This document shows positions 1 to 28,500 of a stretch of 64,000 bases of DNA, in pieces (the first letter of the stretch is position 1; the number at the start of each line of letters is the position of its first letter). Source of the stretch: Podarcis pityusensis (taxonomy: Eukaryota). The notes beneath the pieces were generated by a model. That model saw nothing but the letters and a program-made list of their open reading frames with translations, searched no databases and had not been told where the DNA came from. A program made the position numbers and the translations under genes. The DNA is taken from assembly GCA_964106645.2 (NCBI GenBank), contig OZ067043.1; one strand, 5' to 3'.

Positions 1-554
1 ACTGGGAAAAGCTAATTGCTGGACAGTTGTTTCATTAATGAGCCTGATATCCCTTTCCTGCAGCAGAATAATTTCAAAAGGAGATAGGTAATGCTCCTGC
101 AGGGAATCAGGAAATCTCAACAGGGTATCTTGTGTTATTTCTCACTGCCTCACAGATAAGAGAGAGGCCATATGATGTATATATTTCCGTTTATAACCAA
201 TTCTGTTTACAACCAGAGGGGGTAAAGTTGCATCTTCCTGAACACACATTTATTTTAAACCTACAGGCCCCATTGAGATATAATCTCAGAATTACCTAGT
301 TACTTCTAAGCAAGAAGAGGCAAAAATTAGAAGTAAAAATATATCAAAACTTAGGCCCAATCAGATGCCTTTGTTCTTTGCATGTTGTTTTAGGCAAGCC
401 CAATTGTTTTTAAAACTATGGCTTGCACAGATAGCCTACCCTGGAGGTAGCCAACAGGTTGGCTGGGGCTGATGGAAGTTGTAGTCCAACAGCATCTGGA
501 GGGCACCTGACTATCTCTGACCTACATTGTCTCAGGACAGTGATCATCAGCAGA

Positions 555-660
555 ATTAGAGGAACAAAGGAAGTTGTCTTATAGAAAGTCAGACCATTGG
601 CTCATCTAGGTCAATATTGTTGACACTGACTGACAGGTGGCTCTCGGGTTTCAGGCAGAA
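555..660 (-). mobile_element. CR1-type 3' tail remnant
   Basis: agtcagaccattggctcatctaggtcaatattgt resembles the CR1 3' end also seen near 28670. Confidence 0.5.
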
Positions 661-1021
661 TCCAATTTTTTTTTAAGTATATGAATGTGTCTTTACTCAT
701 TGAAAAAGGCTTGTGAACACAGTGCATTGCATATGAGTGGTTAATGATCAGTTCTGTTGGGAATGCTTAGTTATGCCCTACCTTTTGATGGAAATTTGTT
801 ATATTAAAAAGTAATAAATTATAAAACCTGTTAAGATCCAAGTGGAAGAACACAACATACTAGCAGTTCACCACAACCTGCAAATGTTATATTTACAAAA
901 GTACAATTTTATGGTATTGGGACTATAGTCAGGAATGGACAAGTGGTCAACTTTATATTTTGTCTATCACATTCAACCTGCAAAAGAATGAGAGCAAATA
1001 ATGCTTATGATTTTAAATGTT

Positions 1022-1027
1022 TTTATT
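1022..1027 (-). promoter_or_regulatory. Probable distal polyadenylation signal of DAB1
   Basis: Minus strand reads tgtaatactgttacaAATAAAaacattt, with UGUA upstream and U/GU-rich sequence downstream. Confidence 0.55.
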
Positions 1028-4000
1028 TGTAACAGTATTACATGGTGTGTTACAGAAATTAATGGAAAATTTCTAAAAATTTGTTGGTTTTTTTTCTGCT
1101 GAATGCATTACACATAAAGTTAAGGGTGAAAAAAAGATGTTCAACAAATGGTTTTCCTCTGAGGTAAAGTTAAAGTAGATCTAGAAATGTACTGCAAAAA
1201 ACAGTCATTTTTATCTTTTCTTTATTAAAAAAATACGTGTCGGAATGCAGAAATCAAAATGAATAAAGGTAGAGAGTAAACATCTTTGCAACGAAGGTGC
1301 CCAGTACATTATTTGATCATAGGTTTTGTCAGACAGTTGAATGACTACGATCTATCAAAATATTTTTTTAATGACATGGTTGGAATCAAGAAACTACTGG
1401 AGACAGTACAGGATGGTGAGTGGGATTCCCTGGTTTAAAATTTAAAGTGACAAATTTAGTGCTAGTGAAGAGCAGGAAGGGGAAAGCTTGTTGACTCCCC
1501 TGAACCTATTATGTATCTATCGAATGGTACAGTGTAGGCTCCGATATTATCTCGCTTCTAGGCTATGGCAAAAAATGAATCTTCTGATGGTGGAACAGGG
1601 TAGCTATGGAGTCTCTTGTTTTAACCCCACCCCACCCCCCAAAAAACCCATAACCAAATGTTTACATGGAGCAAATTTCTTTGTGACTTCTGATTTTGAT
1701 ATCCCAACTTGATTCTCTTTTATAGCTACTATGTAGTATTGGTTACATAAACTTTTCCCATCCTGGGAAGGTTCTTCAGAGGCGTATGGTTACAGAAATC
1801 TTCAAACTATGATGTGAATGCTTTGGTCATTAACTGAAAAGCTAATGAGACCACAACCTACTCCAAAGTTTCATGAAGAACTGAAATGTCACCTTCTTCT
1901 AATCCAATATCCCAACACAAAAATGGTAAATAGTAGGGTTGCCCTATTTATGGAAGCAAAATTCAGTATACAAAAGTTGAACTTTTTTTAGGCAATCATC
2001 CTCCATCTTGGGCATTTTACCAATTTCCCATAATTCCCCCCCAATGCTATTTTCACTGGGGAATTCCAGATGCTTGGCAACCCTGTAAATAGCTTTGCTA
2101 AGGAAGAATGTAGCATTTCCTATTAAAATCAATAATTGGAAGATTATCTAATAAGAAAATGTTTTCATTCACTTGGTTGGACTGAAAATATACAATCCCA
2201 CGCATTTTAAATCCTACTGGGAATATATTTTTTGCATCTTTTGTTTGATGTGAGTTTGCCACAGAGATCCTGACAATTAGAACAGAGAGAAGAAATGACA
2301 GGAACAGTGCATTAGATCTCACTTCTTTGATACTGAGCCTATCAACATCTAGTGTATCATTCACTCACTGGTAAAGCACACATTCAGTATATATTTCACA
2401 AGTTACTGGCTGGAATTAGGAAATTTAGTTGCCAGCACCACCAAATCACCATCCTGTTCCGCTTTCAGCTGTGTGTGTAAAATGCTTTCATTAAACCATT
2501 CAAACATATGGAAATATACAACTCCAGGCCTACACAAATCAATGGAAAATACACAGAAACCTTGGTGTTATGATCTAAAAACAAAAAAATCTGCATAACC
2601 CATTAAGCAATTCCTCATTTGGGTTCATTAACTTTTTTTTTAGTGCTAAACCACTAAAATTCAATATATTGTGATCTGCATAGGAACTTCAGGAAAACAC
2701 ATTTGACCTGTATAACAATTCTCTGTAGGCCAAAAATATATAGATTCTTTATGCAAATTATGTGCTAAGGATAGGAACCAAACACTGCACTTTTCTTACA
2801 TAAATGCTTAAAAAAGAGAATTTTTAAAAAGTTGTTTCTGATTTGTGTGTAAACAGTTTTGATTTTTATTTTCTAGCTATGAAATGGCTATGGAATGTAC
2901 TTTTTTCCCTTGAAAATGTACAGTATGTAGTAATATTTGTGTCATAAAAGCAAGAAAATAAATCATGTGTTACCCATCAACTTTACTAGTTGCTGACAAC
3001 CTAATTGCTGCTGGGAAATGCACTTTATTATAAGCATGTGGGGGGGAAAAACCATACGAGATGCAAGAGCCACAGACTGGGGGTTTCCACACTTCCAAAG
3101 TACTGCCATTTGCTACCTTCTCTACAGTGTCATGGCATTATTAAAAGAATTCTCATAACATTTTATATTTACAAAAAAAACCTGGCAAATTTCATTCAAA
3201 CTCCTTAAAGCCATTTCCCCTTAAACATTTAAAGAGTTTTATGGTAAGTTTTTTTTTTCCTTTTTAATTTCAAGTTATAAAATAAAAATCCCATTTGAAT
3301 TTTTCTGATGTACAAAAAGTGATAAAGATGAACAATTTGATCACAGAATCAGTTTCAAAATTCATGCCATCTTCATCTTGGTTAATAAAGTCCATCCCAA
3401 TCAAATCCAGAAAGCATACTGGAAGTATTTGGCAAACAATTTTTTCTCTCTCTCTCTCTTCAAAAATGGCACACAGAGAAGAAAAACACTTGTCTGCATA
3501 GCATTACAGCAGCAAGATATCAAAGAAATAAAAAATATTCCTTTACTGGTCTTTGTTTTAAGAGTCCCCTAGGAAATAACACTGTTAAGTCTTTTTCTTC
3601 TTCTTTTTCTTCATCAAAATATTTGATGTCCTTTTCTACCCACAGCAGAAGTATTCAAAACAAAAAAGCAGCATTTCATCTCTTTGATGTACTGTAATTT
3701 CAAAAGGTCCATTTGGCAAACGTTTCCCAATCAAGATGGATAATCAGCAAAATGGCAATCCATGGTTTCAAGTTAAGGATAATTTTCACAGGAGGCGTTC
3801 TGCTGCTAGAGTCTGTCACCTGTCTGTAAGAAAAGGGGATAGAATGGAACACTCAAATACTTTGTCCCCTACCTTCAAATATGCCATTATGGAGTAGTAT
3901 TGGGTGGCAGCGGCGGGGAATACAGCCAGATCAGTCTAATATGGTGATAAAAAAGTCACCATATCATCAAAATGTGCAGCCACAGAGCTCAATGGCTGTA

Positions 4001-4379
4001 GAATTCATTATTTTTTTCCTGCGTTTTTTATATTATTAAATGATTAGCAGTCCTTTAACAGATTTGAACTGATTACTTCCATAATGTGGTGCACTCGAAA
4101 TGGCAAAAAAGTGACAAGGCGTGGTGGGAAATGCTGGATAGTTGAAACTTGAGGAAAGGTTTTGCTTGGATATCAGGACTGTGGAACAAAACAAAAGTGT
4201 CATGTTCTGCCATAGAGAGTTGCCACTGGTTGCCAAAACATTTTGCTTGTTGAACTGATGCAGTGAGGTGATTATCCTTTATTAGATGAGATCAACTGCA
4301 AGAAAATGTGGAAGCCAAAGGCCTGTCAAGGCTGTAGTTTTCTGTTTGAGTCTTGAAGCACCACAAGCGTGGGTCAACG

Positions 4380-4424
4380 CTATTTCTTAGGTCTGTTGAT
4401 CTGGGCATAGAGAGGCTCTCTTTC
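4380..4424 (-). CDS. DAB1: Candidate alternative DAB1 C-terminus at the start of the last exon: EREPLYAQINRPKK*
   Basis: GAA AGA GAG CCT CTC TAT GCC CAG ATC AAC AGA CCT AAG AAA TAG starts exactly at the acceptor in phase 0, compatible with the phase-0 donor of exon 13. Translation is not demonstrated. Confidence 0.55.
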   Translation of the reverse strand, partial: EREPLYAQINRPKK

Positions 4425-4739
4425 CTGGGAACAATAGAAAGAAATGTGAATAGAGACAGTTCTAGTCATTTGTATCTAAGCAGCAGATTTCAGGAAAGTA
4501 GGTGAGCAGAATAAAAATGCTAAAGAAATAGCATTTTTATTATTTTGAATTATGATGGTGTTTGAAAAGGCAGTAATAATATAAAAGGATTCAGCAATTT
4601 CACATTGTTTATTAAGAACCCAATTCATTGTTTAAGTTGAAATAATTAGAATGAAATAGAATTCATGTACATCTCACAGTACAGTTGAGACCAGAAGAGG
4701 CTAAGTTTGCAATTATTGTTTTTAAACACACAGAGCAAA

Positions 4740-11600: not shown

Positions 11601-13112
11601 TCTTAATGCTTTTTCAGCTAGACTATTATTTAACTGTAAATTTCCCCTACCTGATGAAAGTGCGGGAGAGCCAAAACGGAACACCTGCTCATCCCTCCCT
11701 TTAAACTGTCATAATGCTGATATGGAGCCATACAATGTGCAAACATTAAAAAGCAAAGCACAATAGTATAGTTCAAACTGATGGGGAAAGTGGGATAAAG
11801 GAACATATTTTAAAGAGACAAAGTAGTTATTGAAGAGTCTGACACCCCCTTAGTTGTATACTGCTTAGAAATCTAAAGCCACAAATGACAAAGCAAACAT
11901 TTCAAATTTACCTCTTCTTTAAAATAAAAAAAAGTAACTGAGGAAGTGAGACTGCACATACTTCAGGGATGACAGTGGTTTCAGGTGAGGGCAGAAATGG
12001 TTTTAGGCTCATGGGAAAGGGACTATTGGATAGCAGCTAGTACATTCAGATATCTGTGGTTGGAAGCACATTCTTAAAAGCCTGGAAACCGATGCACATT
12101 ATGCACTAAAAATAAATCCACCATTTCCATTAATTTGTTTCATATGCTCCATACACAGAAAGATGAGCAATAAATCACATAGTGCTTGAACTGTTTCAAA
12201 TCACAGCACAGTGTAATAAAAGAAACATTTTTCATATGGCAGCATTGGAATACATTTGAGATGAGATGGGGATGTTCAACACTCACAGGCACTGTAGCAT
12301 CACAATCTTTCTGACAAAACAGATGCCAGAATAAAAATAGCCACGGTCACCCTCATAAAACATCTATCAACACCCACAACATGCAGCGTGCAGTTAACAA
12401 TTAAAGCAATTGTGTTGCCTTAGCATTTTGTCATGGAAAATATATATTTAAAATGGTATGGTTATATGTTCTCTGTATCAATGGGTTGTTAACCCGTAGA
12501 CATCAACATTGTAATTTAATATTTTCATTAGACCCTTTAACTAATAGGTTTTCCAATTGACCATTATTGTGGCCACAGAGTGGGAAGGCACATTTAATTT
12601 ATTGATGGTGCTTAATTCCTTCTCTTAAAAAATATGTTGCACTGCTGATGTCATTCCAGTCCTGGATGAACATTGTCTGCCACTTTGCAATTTCTATCAG
12701 AAAAAGATAAAATGCACAATATACAAATATCTTAAATGCTAATCATGAATACCAGAAACTACAGAGCATCAATATTCTGTAAGAAAAACAACAACTATGA
12801 ACCTGTTGTTGATAATCTCTCATTTCACAGTTGCTGTAATATATATTTTCCCTAGGGTTGTATTGTTTTTTTATTATTATTCTTATTCTGACAACACAAA
12901 AGTGCACCACCTAGAAATGGAATTATCAACCAGTGATGCATCAATGGTGTGAGAAGTAGTGAAATGAAGGTATGAAATATTCCATATTGTATATGTGGAA
13001 TATATTATGTTTGTGGCTAGCATCAATGTAAATGAAGGCAGGCAATGGTGAATATGAATAGCTCAAAAGTGACAGAGAGAAAAGGACAGATACCTACCCC
13101 AACCTGCGCTAT

Positions 13113-13196
13113 CTAGCTATCGCCCTGTGGACTTACAGTATCACCAATGGGCTCACCAAATGGATCACTGTTGGATGAGGCCTGAGATCCATCAGG
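13113..13196 (-). CDS. DAB1: DAB1 exon 14 coding part: PDGSQASSNSDPFGEPIGDTVSPQGDS* (exon extends 15 nt past the stop, to 13098)
   Basis: Acceptor ttcttgtattctag; TAG at 13115-13113; followed by ATAGCGCAGGTTGGG|gtaggt. Confidence 0.95.
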   Translation of the reverse strand, partial: PDGSQASSNSDPFGEPIGDTVSPQGDS

Positions 13197-15110
13197 CTAG
13201 AATACAAGAACATAACACCTTTTTTTCTCAACAACAGAAAGGAAAACAAAGTCAGCAGTTATTTTCATGCAGTGGGTGCATTTTAACATGAATATCTATT
13301 GTGGATGAAAATAATTTAAAAGCCATAAACTACAGCTGATATTTCCTAGGACCAACTGCTGCCAGTGGGCCAGCCCTGGATAGGATAGTAAACTGATTTG
13401 AGCTCACAGAAACAGTCTTTTAGGTTAGTGCATTTTGGCCAAAGTTAACTTTACCTTCAAGACTTGGTCAAGAAGCAGACAAATGCCTAGTGCATGGCTT
13501 CTGCTTTAAGCCTGCCTCATTAGTGGTTCTAGTTTGTGATGAGCCATTCATGTGAAGCAGTTGCCATGGCCACGTCTGACTATTTTTGCACCGCAACTCA
13601 AACCCAGCCAAATATGAGTTTTCAGCAATATGAGAGCAATCTGGATCTGTGTATGGTGCCCATAACTGGTTTGTGGTCATCACAAGCAAATTTGGACACC
13701 ACAGATCTGAGACCAGGTTGCAATTATCAATGTGAGGTCATGCTTCTGCTGTCTCCTTGCAAGTGGGGCAGGCACAGAGTCATGCGTTAGCTATTGTATT
13801 CACCACTCGTGCTATTCAACTTAAGCCAAGCCATGTGATTGTACTGACAGCAAAACTTATCCATATTGTCACCTACCCAAGCCACTACACATTGACCTGT
13901 GAAGGGTTGTCCATTCCCAGTATTAAGGTGTATACTTACTTTCATTTTCAAATGTCACTGATTCCCCCCTCCCCCTGGGAAATCAAATGTGTTGTGCTAT
14001 TTTTACAATGTCTGAAGAAATCTGCCAGCTCCTCCCCCTGAAAACAATCTGGTCATATAAAGCATTCCTGTTGAATGCTAGAAAATGGAGAGCATGGATT
14101 CTCTCTTCCCTGCCAGTCATCCTCCCTGGCTTGCCCTGGAGAAAGCAGAGGGAAGAACTCACTACTCTGTAAGATCCTTCCTAGGTTGAGTTCAGCCTGA
14201 AGGTGGCAAAACTCAGACACTGAGTGCCAGGGGCTACATTTTGAACTCCCCCCCCCATTGCATCACACCAAAGTCTCTGAACTCCTTTGTCTTTCAGCCC
14301 CAATATCCTTCTGTGTTTCTAAGGCAGAACTGCAAATTTATATTGGCTACAATGGTGCCATCACACAAAGCTTTGATGGCACACTGCTGCTTCCGGTTCT
14401 TGAAATCTAATTCACAGTTGCGCCTCCTGAATTCTGTCTCTTCGAAGAGCTGGCAGGAGGAGGTAGATACAGACTAATAAATCATGAGAGAACAATCCAG
14501 CAGAAATGTATAACAAGTAGGAACACTCAAATAGACTGCATAAGCTGACATGTAGATAAAAATGTTAAGTTAATCTGTGCAATCTTCCATTTTGACTTAC
14601 ACGTTTTTGCTTCAGCAGTATACGTGCTAGTCTAGCACATATCGGTGCTGATGGGGAAACTGGAAGAGTGAAGTGGGAGCACTGATCAACACTCTGTCCT
14701 CTGTAATTTACATTAGTTGTGAGCAGTCAGGAGAAAATCGGAAGCGTTTGAAGGGTGGGGGAAGAGGGCTGGGTTCATTATTTCTCCTTCCGTTTGATTT
14801 GCATCAAATAAGGAGAAAAATTGAGGGAACATTTGGGTTCATATCCTAACTCTCTATGTTTTGTAGGGCCACCTTCATTGCCCAAAGTCAATGTTAATTG
14901 TCTATAACTGGACTAGGAAACTCTCCTCTATTTTCTTCTACAGTCCAATTTTGCTGATTGAATACTACCTTTAATGTGATCTACAGCAAATGTTTTAGTA
15001 CTCATGCAAAGTAGAACTTGACTATAATTTTCAAAATTTTCAAAACTGTGAACCATGTACATGGTAACTGAGCAGTTTATGGGTTAATGATTTGGAATTG
15101 CCCCACTTAC

Positions 15111-15238
15111 CGCTTCCTGTTCTTCACTTTTACTTGGACTTTCAAAGCCCTCTTCAAAGAGGTCATCTGCAGCAGGGTCACTGGTATGAGATGCTGAGGA
15201 TTTGGATGGAGAACTTTGTCTAGGAGCAGGAGTTGGAG
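15111..15238 (-). CDS. DAB1: DAB1 exon 13 (128 nt): (P)[42 protein letters not shown] (SP-x-K Cdk5-type sites)
   Basis: Acceptor gtctttattcag, donor GCG|gtaagt; phase 1-0. Confidence 0.97.
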
Positions 15239-16428: not shown

Positions 16429-16977
16429 GTGAGTTCGTCGATGGCGTTGTAGAAGTCACAGGAGTCAAATTTAACTGAGAGATGTCAAAGTCATCACAAT
16501 CATCTGCTTCCTGTGCCATCCCAACTTTGTTAAAGTAACTGGAGAAGGCCTCTGAGGTACAACTGAGGGAAGGCTGATCTGGTTTTCGTGATGGCACTGG
16601 TGGAGGCTGAGCCATCTGGAAATCTTTGAACATTTCTTTTCCTGCTTGCTGCCTAGGCCTATCTGTCTGCGGACTGGATCTGGTGGAATCACTTGTAGGT
16701 GGAACGGTAGCAATGGGAGCAACGGTACCTTGAAACATGGCTGCTTGTAAAGGCAATACAGTTTGTGTTGGCATGAAGGCAGCAGGCTGAAACTGACCAG
16801 CTACAGATGGCCATGGTTGCTGGGTGGGAGAAAATATCCCAGGTTGTCCCCATGCAATTGACTGTCCTCCCTGCATCACCTGAGCAACTGGAGGCTGAGC
16901 ACCCATGGCCAGTTGTTGTTGAACAAGAGGTTGTTGTCCCCAGAAGGAGGGCAGGACAGCTCCCATTGCAACATAAC
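16429..16977 (-). CDS. DAB1: DAB1 exon 12 (549 nt): (G)[15 protein letters not shown]...[15 protein letters not shown](P)
   Basis: Lies inside ORF 16373..17137; acceptor ttccccccgaag, donor CAC|gtgagt; phase 1-1. Confidence 0.97.
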
Positions 16978-25403: not shown

Positions 25404-25460
25404 CTGAGTGACTCTACCAAGATTTTCATCTATGTCCAACAACAGGCTTCCATTCTCCAG
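25404..25460 (-). CDS. DAB1: DAB1 alternative cassette exon in intron 9 (57 nt): LENGSLLLDIDENLGRVTQ; counterpart of the chicken Dab1-E 57-nt insert and mammalian 9b/9c
   Basis: Acceptor atgcattacag, donor CAG|gtaaga; phase 0-0, open frame; length and peptide resemble the 19-aa chicken insert as recalled; dense YCAY cluster upstream. Confidence 0.88.
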
Positions 25461-25540: not shown

Positions 25541-28500
25541 CAACAATTATTGATTTTACTTCTGAACAAGAGCTATTTTATAGTTTCCTGGTCAGATGCT
25601 TTTGCTTGCCTCAGTGATTATATACATACTATAAGTTTTCATGGTTATATCGTACAAAGAAACAGAACCCAGCGTGGGGAAGTGAAAATGAAGGGTTGGG
25701 AATATCCATTTAAGAAAAACCAGAGTTCTCAGTGGCTTCCCTTGAGTTCTCTGGGTTGTGTAAGTGGACTATAATATGGGACACTGAGGTAATGGGGAAG
25801 AGCACAGAAGTTCCCATACATAGGGGTCCCTAGGGTGAGGATGACTTCCATCTCTACTGTGTCCTACATATATTTCCTCATATATGAAAATGGTCAACAT
25901 TCACTCATAAGAGAAAAATAAATCCTTGCAGCTGAACACATTACAAGGGACAGAAACACCACCCATTGCCTATAGTTATAGGGATGCCATGGGAACCACA
26001 CCAACCATTGGATTTCACCATTATTTTCTCTGAGCAAAATCACTTCTCTATCAGGGAAGGAAAAATAGTTCCAGAAGTTCCAGAATGAATCAGAATGTCC
26101 CTTCAAAATGAACCAGCCAGCCCTGTTGTATTTTCTGAATCTGGAGAAAAGCCCTACAACAAACTTCCACAATCTGGTGCCCTCCCAGTGTTTTGAACAG
26201 CAACTTCCACCATCCCTAGTCATTGGCCAAATCCTAGAGAAGAGACTTCCTGGTTTATTTTTAAGATGTTCTGGGGTGTCCCAGGGCTTTCATGAATGTA
26301 GATTTTTCTCACAACTTTAGCTTCCCTCGTAGGCTAACAATACTGAAAGGCAGGAAGAGGCTCATATCTTTCAAAGCAATTACTTTGAATTGTGGCTTCA
26401 CATTTTGCTTAATAACTCATTCTAATGGGGCTAGAGATTTACTTTAAAAAATAATAATGCCAGGGTCCCCTTGTTGGTTGTGAGCCCAGTACAGATAGCC
26501 CCTGAACCCCACCTCCCATCTCAATTTGTGCATCATTTGTGCATCTATAAGCTATCAGTTGACCCAATGCACCAATTAGGATTAATTTTCCTTTTGTTCT
26601 CCTGCCAGCAGGAGAATATGTAGTCACTACTTATGGACTCGCTTTAAGAAAGGCCTACAAAGGTTAACCAGCACATGATTTCAGAGAAGCATGAAGGCAG
26701 AGATGCAGTAATAGATTACTTTGCTACAAGTCATGTATGTTTTCAGAATCTAAAACAAATTATCTTTTTTCTCGGGACAGGATTATCTTGTTTCTCCTCC
26801 TCCTGAGCAGCACTCCAGCTGTCCTAAAAATTCTTCACTGCTGTCACGCTGAGTCATGCTGTGCCCTCAGCTGCCTTGCTGAACCAACACTGATTGCTCT
26901 TATGAAGCTGTCTGGAGAAACAGCAACAGCGTAATACTGGAGAAACATGTGTGCGGCGTTCAACAGACCATTAGCAACAACCTGATTGTGCTATGGCAGG
27001 ACCTCCCAGAAAATAGTTGCCTGCCATGTCACTGCATGTCCCAAGTGCCCAATTATCATGGAGCACTTGGGCTGTATCCTCCATCAGTTCTTGTTCTGCA
27101 TCACTTGCCGCTGAGGAGATGCTTCCTAAGGGTGAGCCATTAGTGTCTATTAGACCGTGGAAAAGTCTTCAGCGGAGACTTCACAGGAGAACACTGCTCT
27201 AACTGGGGGCAAATATTTGGCACCGTTTGTCTGTCTTTCCTTAGACGTTTCAATACAAAAGGTTTCTCCAATTAGAGCAAACCCTCCTGCACCCCCCACC
27301 TGCTTCTTCCTAGCGAGCTGCAGAAACAACCGGCAGCATAGCAAGACGTTAGATTGCTTGATCTTTCTGTATAATTGCAGCCTTTGTGGATTTCTCTCTG
27401 TGTGTTAAAATGTAAAGGCTGCTTCTAATTACTTGAAAATCTGTCTCATCACAGATCAAAACATACACACACATACCCCACAGCTCAGTCAGTGAAGAAC
27501 ACACAAGCAAGTTGCCTGAAGGGGTAGGGGGAATAGCAAAAACCCTCCTCCCAGGAAGGTATTTAAGCCTTTCAACAACTGTTGTATCTCCTCCTGTCGG
27601 CATACAGAAAGAGAGGTTGCCAATGTTTCAACCTGATGTTTAAATGAAAAGGCACCTGTTTGGGTTTTGTAAGCCTCTCCATTGCCACGGCATTTGTCAC
27701 TTGGTGGAAGGGAACAGACAAAATCATATTTGTTTTTTAAAATAAAAATTTGTAGGAGGGTAGTGAAACAACAGGATACAATGTAGAGTCTACCTGAGCT
27801 ATGTTCATTGAGAAACAGACACACACAGAGAAAGGAGTGGGGGGAGGAAGAGGTGAGGTTGTATCCCATGCTAATCCTACTCATCTAATAGACCAGCTGA
27901 AGTTAATGGATACAACTAACTTAAGTTCATTAAGTTCAATGGGTCTAAGTAGGGCTAGCATTAGATAAAATCCTGGGTCTTGGATTCTTCACCTTCATAT
28001 TTGACAGACAAAGCAAACAGTTTAGGCAATTGGTACATTTCAAGTCCAAATAGCCATTCTCTTTTTTAATTCCTCCTGCTGCTAATCTGGTGCTTGTTTT
28101 TCCATGATATTCTATCATGTTTGTGCCTTATTTTACAATCTACCTTTTGAGCATGTCTCAGTCTAACGGAGCTTGTATAGAATTGATTTCTAATGAATTT
28201 TGCCCAATATATTTAGGTCTGCAAACCTCTTAGGAATGTATTCTCAGGAATCATTTATTCCTGGCATTAAGTCTCCTTTGTGCACCCACTGTTAATATTA
28301 GCAAATGCTCTGTGGGAGGCATCCAAGCCTTAGAATAGTTTATTAAGCAATTAATGAAGTTTTTAATTCTTAAAATCTTTGCAGCAGGAAACGTTTGAGC
28401 AAATCATAAAAAATATCACTGTCTTGACCTAATGGATAGAGATGCTGCTTCAAAAATCTAATAAAGTAGTTAATTGCTTTGTCTCTCATCTCCATAATGC

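What the first reader, a model, noticed from the sequence alone, without database searches (positions are those of the whole stretch)
4380..4424. Hidden EPLYAQI (EPIYA-like, Csk-SH2-type) C-terminal module at the start of the 'non-coding' last exon of DAB1
Seen: the first 45 nt after the last acceptor read EREPLYAQINRPKK* in phase 0. Exon 13 ends in phase 0, so skipping exon 14 gives ...SEEQEA-EREPLYAQINRPKK*. Known: pY-[A/S/T]-[K/R/Q/N]-[V/I/M] is the Csk SH2 preference, and EPIYA/EPLYA motifs (CagA, pragmin, p140Cap) and VE-cadherin LYAQV recruit Csk. DAB1 is the substrate and activator of Fyn/Src in Reelin signalling. From memory, and needing verification, the human 3' UTR here reads EPEPLYAQINRPKK* with third-position differences, which would indicate coding selection across amniotes. 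Inference: an alternative DAB1 isoform carries an extra phosphotyrosine that docks Csk and acts as a splice-controlled brake on Src-family kinases. I cannot tell whether automated annotations already list such an isoform.
Basis: partly seen in the sequence, partly recalled or inferred. Interest (0 to 1): 0.92.

Follow-up and report, generated by a model that had tools for sequence, protein, structure and literature searches.

The report
Conserved alternative tyrosine-bearing tail of DAB1
The supposedly non-coding last exon of the brain-development adaptor gene DAB1 begins with 14 codons, conserved from fish to mammals, that give one splice form an extra tyrosine docking motif; the splice form was cloned in pig in 2011, but I found no study of what the motif does.

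Summary
Observation confirmed, and the frame is under protein-level selection. Minus strand 4424-4380 reads EREPLYAQINRPKK* right after an acceptor, in phase with the 128-nt exon ending at 15111. Fin whale, sturgeon and three teleosts keep acceptor, 14 codons and stop in register: xx[ED]PLYAQ[IV]NxxKK*. Third codon positions vary most (10/15 against 7/30, p=0.006), and indels begin after the stop.

The isoform is not hidden. A pig liver cDNA (sDab1-Li, PMC3044655) skips the stop-bearing exon and ends in this 45-nt exon. Annotated models of birds, turtles, salmonids and reindeer carry the tail, reached by skipping or by an internal donor. The pig paper did not count this tyrosine, and I found no study of it. 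The pig cDNA and all four bird skip models also lack exons 7-8, so the tail may belong to the early/non-neural Dab1-E-type form.

A phosphotyrosine-SH2 site is likely. Csk is the best guess, from near-identity to the Bartonella BepD and CagA 'KK' motifs, but it is untested, and pragmin shows the effect on Src kinases could go either way. The scan had not noted this on other DNA.

The parts
4380..4424 (-). Coding start of the last DAB1 exon: 14 codons EREPLYAQINRPKK plus TAG; Tyr codon 4409-4407
   Evidence: pig exon 17 is 45 nt to the stop
4425..4460 (-). Pyrimidine tract and cag acceptor of the last exon
   Evidence: AG directly before the first codon in all six species
15111..15238 (-). 128-nt exon ('exon 13'), ends in phase 0; donor for the skip route
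   Evidence: pig exon 15 is 128 nt
13098..13196 (-). Stop-bearing penultimate exon ('exon 14', 99 nt, 27 codons, stop 13115-13113); skipped or cut short in tail-bearing isoforms.
13131..13139 (-). Candidate internal donor ACT|GTAAGT (last exon base 13137), phase 0, upstream of the stop; use not shown
   Evidence: no squamate model using it was found
13119..13127 (-). Position of the ...SPQ| internal donor used by bird and turtle models; here CAG|GGC, so no GT
13080..13115 (-). Stop codon plus a conserved cluster of tandem donors (canonical GGG|GTAGGT, last exon base 13098), near-identical in lizard, whale, sturgeon and Aldrovandia
   Evidence: pig exon 16 ends GTCTGG|gt
16429..16977 (-). 549-nt exon 12 of DAB1, used as the search handle that identifies the gene
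25404..25460 (-). Exon 9b, included in all four bird skip models and in the pig cDNA

Best explanation
DAB1 has two alternative C-termini. Normally the penultimate exon supplies the stop and the last exon is 3' UTR. When the penultimate exon is skipped, or is spliced at an internal phase-0 donor before its stop, translation runs into the last exon and ends in xx[ED]PLYAQ[IV]NxxKK. SHOWN: the frame, its conservation across bony vertebrates, and the skip transcript in pig. INFERRED (about 0.85): the lizard makes it, most likely by the 15111->4424 skip, giving about 538 aa on the 551-aa backbone. INFERRED (about 0.7): the tyrosine is phosphorylated by a Src- or Abl-family kinase and read by an SH2 domain; an acid at -3, Leu at -1, Ala at +1 and Ile/Val at +3 are kept in every sequence seen. 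INFERRED (about 0.45): Csk is a main reader. Since the PTB domain holds DAB1 at membranes and receptor tails, the tail would bring Csk next to Src-family kinases and damp them (net brake in vivo about 0.3). The tail is probably used mostly in the exon-7/8-skipped, 9b-containing early/non-neural form, which has lost the Src-activating YQXI sites.
For: Frame, acceptor and stop are in register in lizard, fin whale, sturgeon, Aldrovandia, a goodeid and charr; four of these loci were fetched through upstream exons, not through the tail. Variable columns: 10/15 third positions against 7/30 first and second, Fisher p=0.006. Single-base codon differences: 9 synonymous / 8 not in frame 0, 1/17 and 4/14 in the other frames; binomial p=0.002 against 19% expected. 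The other frames contain stops, and indels start after the stop. Pig cDNA EF444935 excludes exon 16 and stops in a 45-nt exon 17. Skip models: chicken XP_015146424.1, kittiwake, swift parrot, prinia, salmonids. Internal-donor models: birds, turtles, reindeer. The tail is enriched in exon-8-out models, 15/20 against 49/125. Closest motifs: BepD EPLYAQVNK, BepE EPLYATVNK, CagA EPIYAKVNK. BepE Tyr37 and CagA EPIYA-A/B bind Csk. p140Cap EPLYA/EGLYA tyrosines are needed for Csk binding. Csk acts through SH2 scaffolds, and the paralog Dab2 is listed among them. Csk is needed in cortical migration.
Against: None of the squamate models retrieved carries the tail, although the last search could not score skip forms above threshold. 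I saw no phosphopeptide, binding or mutant data. EPIYA peptides bind many SH2 domains promiscuously. An EPVYA-bearing LspA1 fragment was not phosphorylated in cells, so the motif is not sufficient. Pragmin binds Csk yet raises Src-family activity by sequestering it. RefSeq exon combinations are not independent and may partly copy aligned proteins such as the pig cDNA product. The p-values treat related species as independent columns.
Confidence: 0.5

Rival explanations
1. The tail is a phosphotyrosine site, but its working reader is another SH2 protein (SHP2, a Src-family SH2, PI3K p85, Nck, Crk), or several at once, so it adds or redirects signalling rather than braking it.
For: EPIYA-type peptides bind many SH2 proteins. 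CagA EPIYA-B also binds p85. The LspA1 fragment bound Csk, Nck1/2, Shp2 and Grb2.
Against: The best-characterised look-alikes with A-[KQT]-V-N-K after the tyrosine are the Csk-binding ones. Pro at -2 does not fit an ITIM (own knowledge).
Confidence: 0.22
2. The tail binds Csk but, like pragmin, holds it away from membrane Src kinases or redirects it to other substrates, so the isoform raises Src-family activity or drives motility.
For: Pragmin sequesters Csk in the cytoplasm and forms a feed-forward loop. The pig isoform is mostly cytoplasmic and shuttles to the nucleus.
Against: DAB1 is recruited to receptor tails and phospholipids by its PTB domain (own knowledge), which favours delivery over sequestration.
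Confidence: 0.1
3. The peptide is real but works unphosphorylated: YAQI as a YxxPhi adaptor-binding (trafficking) signal, or the basic end as a membrane or nuclear signal, replacing the AP-2-binding motif of the skipped exon.
For: YAQ[IV] fits YxxPhi, and the skipped exon holds a DPF-type AP-2 motif (both from own knowledge). Terminal KK is invariant.
Against: Invariant [ED]-P-L before the tyrosine and Ala at +1 match kinase/SH2 motifs better than sorting signals. Many bird and turtle models keep most of exon 14 and still add the tail.
Confidence: 0.08
4. The tail is functional in other vertebrates but is no longer, or hardly, spliced in squamates, which lost the internal SPQ| donor.
For: The donor reads CAG|GGC here. 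All lepidosaur models retrieved end ...SPQGDS and none has the tail.
Against: The lizard peptide equals the bird and turtle peptide at 13 of 14 residues, with intact acceptor and stop. The skip route needs no internal donor.
Confidence: 0.07
5. The 45 nt are conserved as an RNA element (splicing enhancer or UTR element) and the peptide is incidental.
For: They sit next to an acceptor, where splicing signals are often conserved. Some UTR blocks downstream are also conserved between lizard and whale.
Against: Third-position and synonymous bias, TAG/TAA interchange in register, no indels before the stop, and a cloned cDNA that uses the frame.
Confidence: 0.03

Closest known systems
Pig sDab1-Li (GenBank EF444935; PMC3044655)
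   Same: Same splice event: the stop-bearing penultimate exon is excluded and the stop lies in a 45-nt coding start of the last exon. The flanking exon sizes (549, 128 nt) equal the window's.
   Different: The authors describe it as carrying only the Y185 and Y197 sites and do not discuss the new C-terminal tyrosine. Their qPCR primers mark exons 9b/9c, not the tail.
RefSeq/Ensembl DAB1 models (chicken X5, X9, X13, X16 = XP_015146424.1; softshell turtle; Mauremys; reindeer CAI9690698.1; charr and huchen dab1a)
   Same: They end in the orthologous tail, by skipping or by an internal donor.
   Different: Automated models without functional annotation. No squamate model with the tail was found.
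Dab1-E / Dab1-L splice switching of tyrosine motifs (exons 7, 8, 9b, 9c)
   Same: Alternative splicing changes the set of SH2-docking tyrosines on DAB1.
   Different: The known switches act on the central YQXI/YXVP cluster. This one adds a sixth, C-terminal site of another class.
EPIYA 'KK' motifs of CagA (EPIYA-A/B) and Bartonella BepD/BepE; host EPIYA-like sites of pragmin and p140Cap
   Same: EPLYAQ[IV]N[KR] is almost letter-for-letter BepD EPLYAQVNK. These motifs are phosphorylated by Src/Abl kinases and several bind the Csk SH2 domain.
   Different: No common ancestry; a single copy, at the extreme C-terminus, under splice control. Phosphorylation and Csk binding have not been tested for DAB1.
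Csk-anchoring scaffolds (Cbp/PAG1, paxillin, caveolin-1, VE-cadherin, Dab2)
   Same: A Src substrate that, once phosphorylated, could recruit Csk as negative feedback.
   Different: DAB1 is not on the published list seen. The retrieved Dab2 proteins end in a DPFGNPFA-type tail with no such motif.

Membership tests
DAB1 alternative C-terminal isoform (sDab1-Li type) | Gene is DAB1 | tested here: met
   Exons match lacertid DAB1 models at 88-100%
DAB1 alternative C-terminal isoform (sDab1-Li type) | Phase-0 donor upstream and an open 14-codon frame with stop at the start of the last exon | tested here: met
   pig table
DAB1 alternative C-terminal isoform (sDab1-Li type) | Frame under coding selection | tested here: met
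DAB1 alternative C-terminal isoform (sDab1-Li type) | Skip junction is spliced in this species | tested here: inconclusive
EPIYA-like phosphotyrosine motif | E/D-P-[IL]-Y-A core | tested here: met
   EPLYA in amniotes, DPLYA in fishes
EPIYA-like phosphotyrosine motif | Lies in a disordered, accessible region | not tested
   Extreme C-terminus after a Ser/Pro/Glu-rich stretch; no PDB match; no disorder prediction run
EPIYA-like phosphotyrosine motif | Tyrosine is phosphorylated by Src/Abl-family kinases | not testable with these tools
   No phosphoproteomic record found; the full-text search for EPLYAQ returned only a bacterial-effector paper
Csk-anchoring scaffold | [quoted passage not shown] | not testable with these tools
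   Sequence resemblance only; the pY-[TAS]-[KRQN]-[MIV] consensus and the VE-cadherin site are from memory, the paper was not held
Csk-anchoring scaffold | Lowers Src-family activity in cells | not testable with these tools
   Pragmin shows the opposite sign is possible

The most novel reading that the evidence does not exclude
The early/non-neural DAB1 form, usually treated as signalling-dead or dominant-negative, carries a splice-gated Csk-docking phosphotyrosine kept for over 400 million years. Splicing would then flip DAB1 from a Src-family activator to a Src-family brake, and vertebrates would keep an endogenous copy of the EPxYAx[VI] 'master-key' motif, reported as depleted from mammalian proteomes, hidden behind a stop-bearing exon.
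Probability: 0.3. Interest if true: 0.8.

Novelty: new variant of a known kind. Interest (0 to 1): 0.55.

Why it matters
DAB1 signalling is explained by five central tyrosines, and the usual constructs (Dab1-555, the 5F mutant) end at the penultimate exon, so they cannot show a sixth site in the last exon. A tyrosine motif held almost unchanged from teleosts to mammals is unlikely to be idle. If it docks Csk, it gives the Reelin/Src pathway a built-in, splice-controlled off switch, and gives the progenitor, gut, liver and tumour forms of DAB1 an active role instead of a passive dominant-negative one. It also explains why the gene keeps an intron just after its stop codon. The test is cheap: one phosphopeptide pull-down and one Y-to-F mutant. 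The interest is capped because the transcript itself has been in GenBank and in a 2011 paper, and the function is still inference from a short motif.

Tried and rejected
This ruled out contig look-ups for bird and turtle models that include exon 14, and further cluster listings, so there is no bird or turtle DNA in the codon test.

The joined (spliced) model was never searched; searches were exon by exon or by returned protein ids.

The look-up of sequencing runs listed RNA-like holders of the 3' UTR in five related organisms but says nothing on junctions. Contig look-ups failed for the chicken, prinia and kittiwake skip models and for two other models, a frog and a probable amphibian; the long DAB1-C8 fused model gave no DNA. 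So amphibians and cartilaginous fishes are untested.

PDB search with the tail region found nothing. Gao 2012, Gao and Godbout 2013 and Baumeister 2005 were not held, and Bar et al. 2003 was not read, so an earlier mention of this tyrosine outside the open library is possible.

The alternative reading frame (...SLRPDQQT*, used by chicken X20, a smelt model and some bird models) was rejected as the selected frame: it has stops in sturgeon and Aldrovandia and mostly non-synonymous change.

Full report
Setting. The window holds the 3' two-thirds of DAB1 on the minus strand. Exons match lacertid DAB1 models at 88-100%. A Podarcis lilfordi gene model that reads into an intron matches the window exactly over 51 intron-derived residues, so the source is that species or a very close wall lizard. 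The window has no N.

The observation. Position 4424 follows a pyrimidine tract and cag, and frame 0 reads EREPLYAQINRPKK* to 4380. The 128-nt exon 15238-15111 ends in phase 0. Between them lies a 99-nt exon, 13196-13098, with the usual stop at 13115-13113, 15 nt before its donor. That distance should keep the standard transcript clear of nonsense-mediated decay (own knowledge). A loose version of the motif occurs once in the six frames of the window, at this acceptor.

Is it coding? I fetched genomic loci through exon-12/13 proteins and looked for the last exon. Fin whale, sturgeon, Aldrovandia, a goodeid and charr each have AG, then 14 codons, then TAG or TAA in the same register: ELEPLYAQINKSKK*, ENDPLYAQINKLKK*, GKDPLYAQINKGKK* (twice) and GKDPLYAQVNKGKK*. 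Only the charr locus was chosen because its model had the tail. Across the six sequences, 10 of 15 third positions vary against 7 of 30 first and second positions (Fisher p=0.006). Single-base codon differences are 9 synonymous to 8 non-synonymous in frame 0, against 1:17 and 4:14 in the other frames. The other frames hit stops in sturgeon and Aldrovandia. Identity is 33-42 of 45 bases inside and 6-20 of 45, ungapped, just after, and indels begin at the stop. The species are related, so the p-values are a guide only, but every measure points the same way. One diverged teleost dab1 copy next to the C8 genes showed no such tail.

Is it made? In other vertebrates, yes. Long et al. 2011 (PMC3044655) cloned sDab1-Li from pig liver: exon 16 excluded, stop in exon 17. 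Their table gives 128 nt for exon 15, 111 nt for exon 16 and 45 nt to the stop in exon 17, beginning GAGCTG. The stated coding lengths (1668 and 1611 nt) add up with exactly this swap. RefSeq lists skip models for chicken (XP_015146424.1), kittiwake, swift parrot and prinia, and charr and huchen models skip the equivalent exon. A second route uses a donor inside exon 14 after ...SPQ, in chicken, penguin, gull, ibis, sandgrouse, two turtle species and a reindeer model.

In this lizard the junction is not shown. I worked beside those places from then on, and the joined spliced model was left out of all searches. No squamate model retrieved has the tail. The last search would have ranked internal-donor forms at the top but could not score skip forms, so skipping is untested rather than excluded. 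The bird/turtle internal donor is dead here (CAG|GGC), and lepidosaur models all end ...SPQGDS. A GTAAGT lies 12 nt upstream in phase 0 (last exon base 13137), where squamates have Val and tuatara, birds and turtles have Ile. It could be a replacement donor, but no model uses it. The lizard tail equals the bird and turtle tail at 13 of 14 residues, which argues that it is still selected.

Which DAB1 form carries it? The pig cDNA lacks exons 7-8 and includes 9b/9c, like chicken Dab1-E. All four bird skip models have the same make-up, and over all retrieved models the tail goes with exon-8 skipping in 15 of 20 against 49 of 125. These models are not independent and may borrow from aligned proteins. 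Still, the hint is that the tail belongs to the early, progenitor or peripheral form, which is also the form in intestine and T-lymphoblastic leukaemia cells, more than to the neuronal Reelin-responsive form.

How it most likely works. The invariant residues are an acid at -3, Pro, Leu, Tyr, Ala, Gln, Ile/Val, Asn, then a basic end. This is nearly the Bartonella BepD motif EPLYAQVNK and the CagA 'KK' motif EPIYAKVNK. CagA EPIYA-A/B and BepE Tyr37 bind the Csk SH2 domain; in mammals pragmin (EPIYA) and p140Cap (EPLYA/EGLYA) do too. Csk needs SH2 scaffolds to reach membrane Src kinases, Dab2 is listed among them, and Csk is required for cortical neuron migration. So the best reading is a splice-gated phosphotyrosine that recruits Csk to PTB-anchored DAB1. 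Against certainty: these peptides bind many SH2 domains, one EPVYA fragment was not phosphorylated in cells, and pragmin's Csk binding raises Src activity. My odds are: tail translated in vertebrates 0.97, in this lizard 0.85, phosphotyrosine-SH2 site 0.7, Csk a main reader 0.45, net brake 0.3.

Novelty. The transcript is known. The pig paper states that the isoform carries only two tyrosine sites and does not mention the tail; a full-text search for the motif found only a bacterial-effector paper, and searches pairing Dab1 with Csk or with C-terminal splicing found no description. Key subscription papers could not be read. I therefore file it as a new variant of a known kind, DAB1's splice-switched tyrosine motifs, with an untested function. 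The motif EPxYAxV is reported as depleted in mammalian proteomes, which makes a conserved, splice-gated EPLYAQI notable. The scan's own notes held only two items on this window and none on other DNA.

Noticed in passing
window 13131-13139 (-): GTAAGT in phase 0 inside exon 14, 12 nt upstream of the lost SPQ| donor. It comes with an Ile-to-Val change seen in all squamate models but not tuatara; a possible donor turnover. No model uses it.
   Followed up: partly
window 13080-13115 (-); L002:35905-35950; L004:14415-14460; L005:14510-14555: The stop, the 15 nt after it and the first intron bases are near-identical in lizard, whale, sturgeon and Aldrovandia and hold several tandem GT donors; likely a conserved splicing control element for the choice of C-terminus. 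In whale the SPQ| site is CAG|GC, and the reindeer model splices at the equivalent position.
   Followed up: partly
window 12700-13097 (-): 16 YCAY elements in 398 nt just downstream of exon 14, against about 7 per 400 nt window-wide; Nova-type regulation that favours inclusion in neurons is a possibility. No significance test was run.
   Followed up: no
L006 (teleost, dab1-like gene next to C8): A diverged second teleost dab1 copy shows neither the tail nor the conserved exon-14 end; the duplicate may have lost the module.
   Followed up: partly
window 25404-25460 (-): Exon 9b is intact; lacertid models include it without a 9c.
   Followed up: partly
window 27300-27353 (-): The candidate 18-nt microexon noted earlier by the scan has cag and gt ends, but no retrieved amniote DAB1 model contains its peptide between exons 9 and 10.
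   Followed up: partly
window 14297-14449 (-): A Podarcis lilfordi 'hypothetical protein' model joins exon 13 to this intronic acceptor; it looks like a gene-prediction artefact but pins down the species.
   Followed up: partly
proteins P0150, P0160, P0197, P0198, P0199, P0241: Several bird models insert a further short exon (QYLLRIG...) between the SPQ| donor and the last exon, some keeping the tail in frame (mallard) and some not.
   Followed up: no
window 254-4283 (-): Eight AATAAA/ATTAAA signals downstream of the tail, the first at 4283, about 100 nt after its stop; alternative 3' ends are possible.
   Followed up: no
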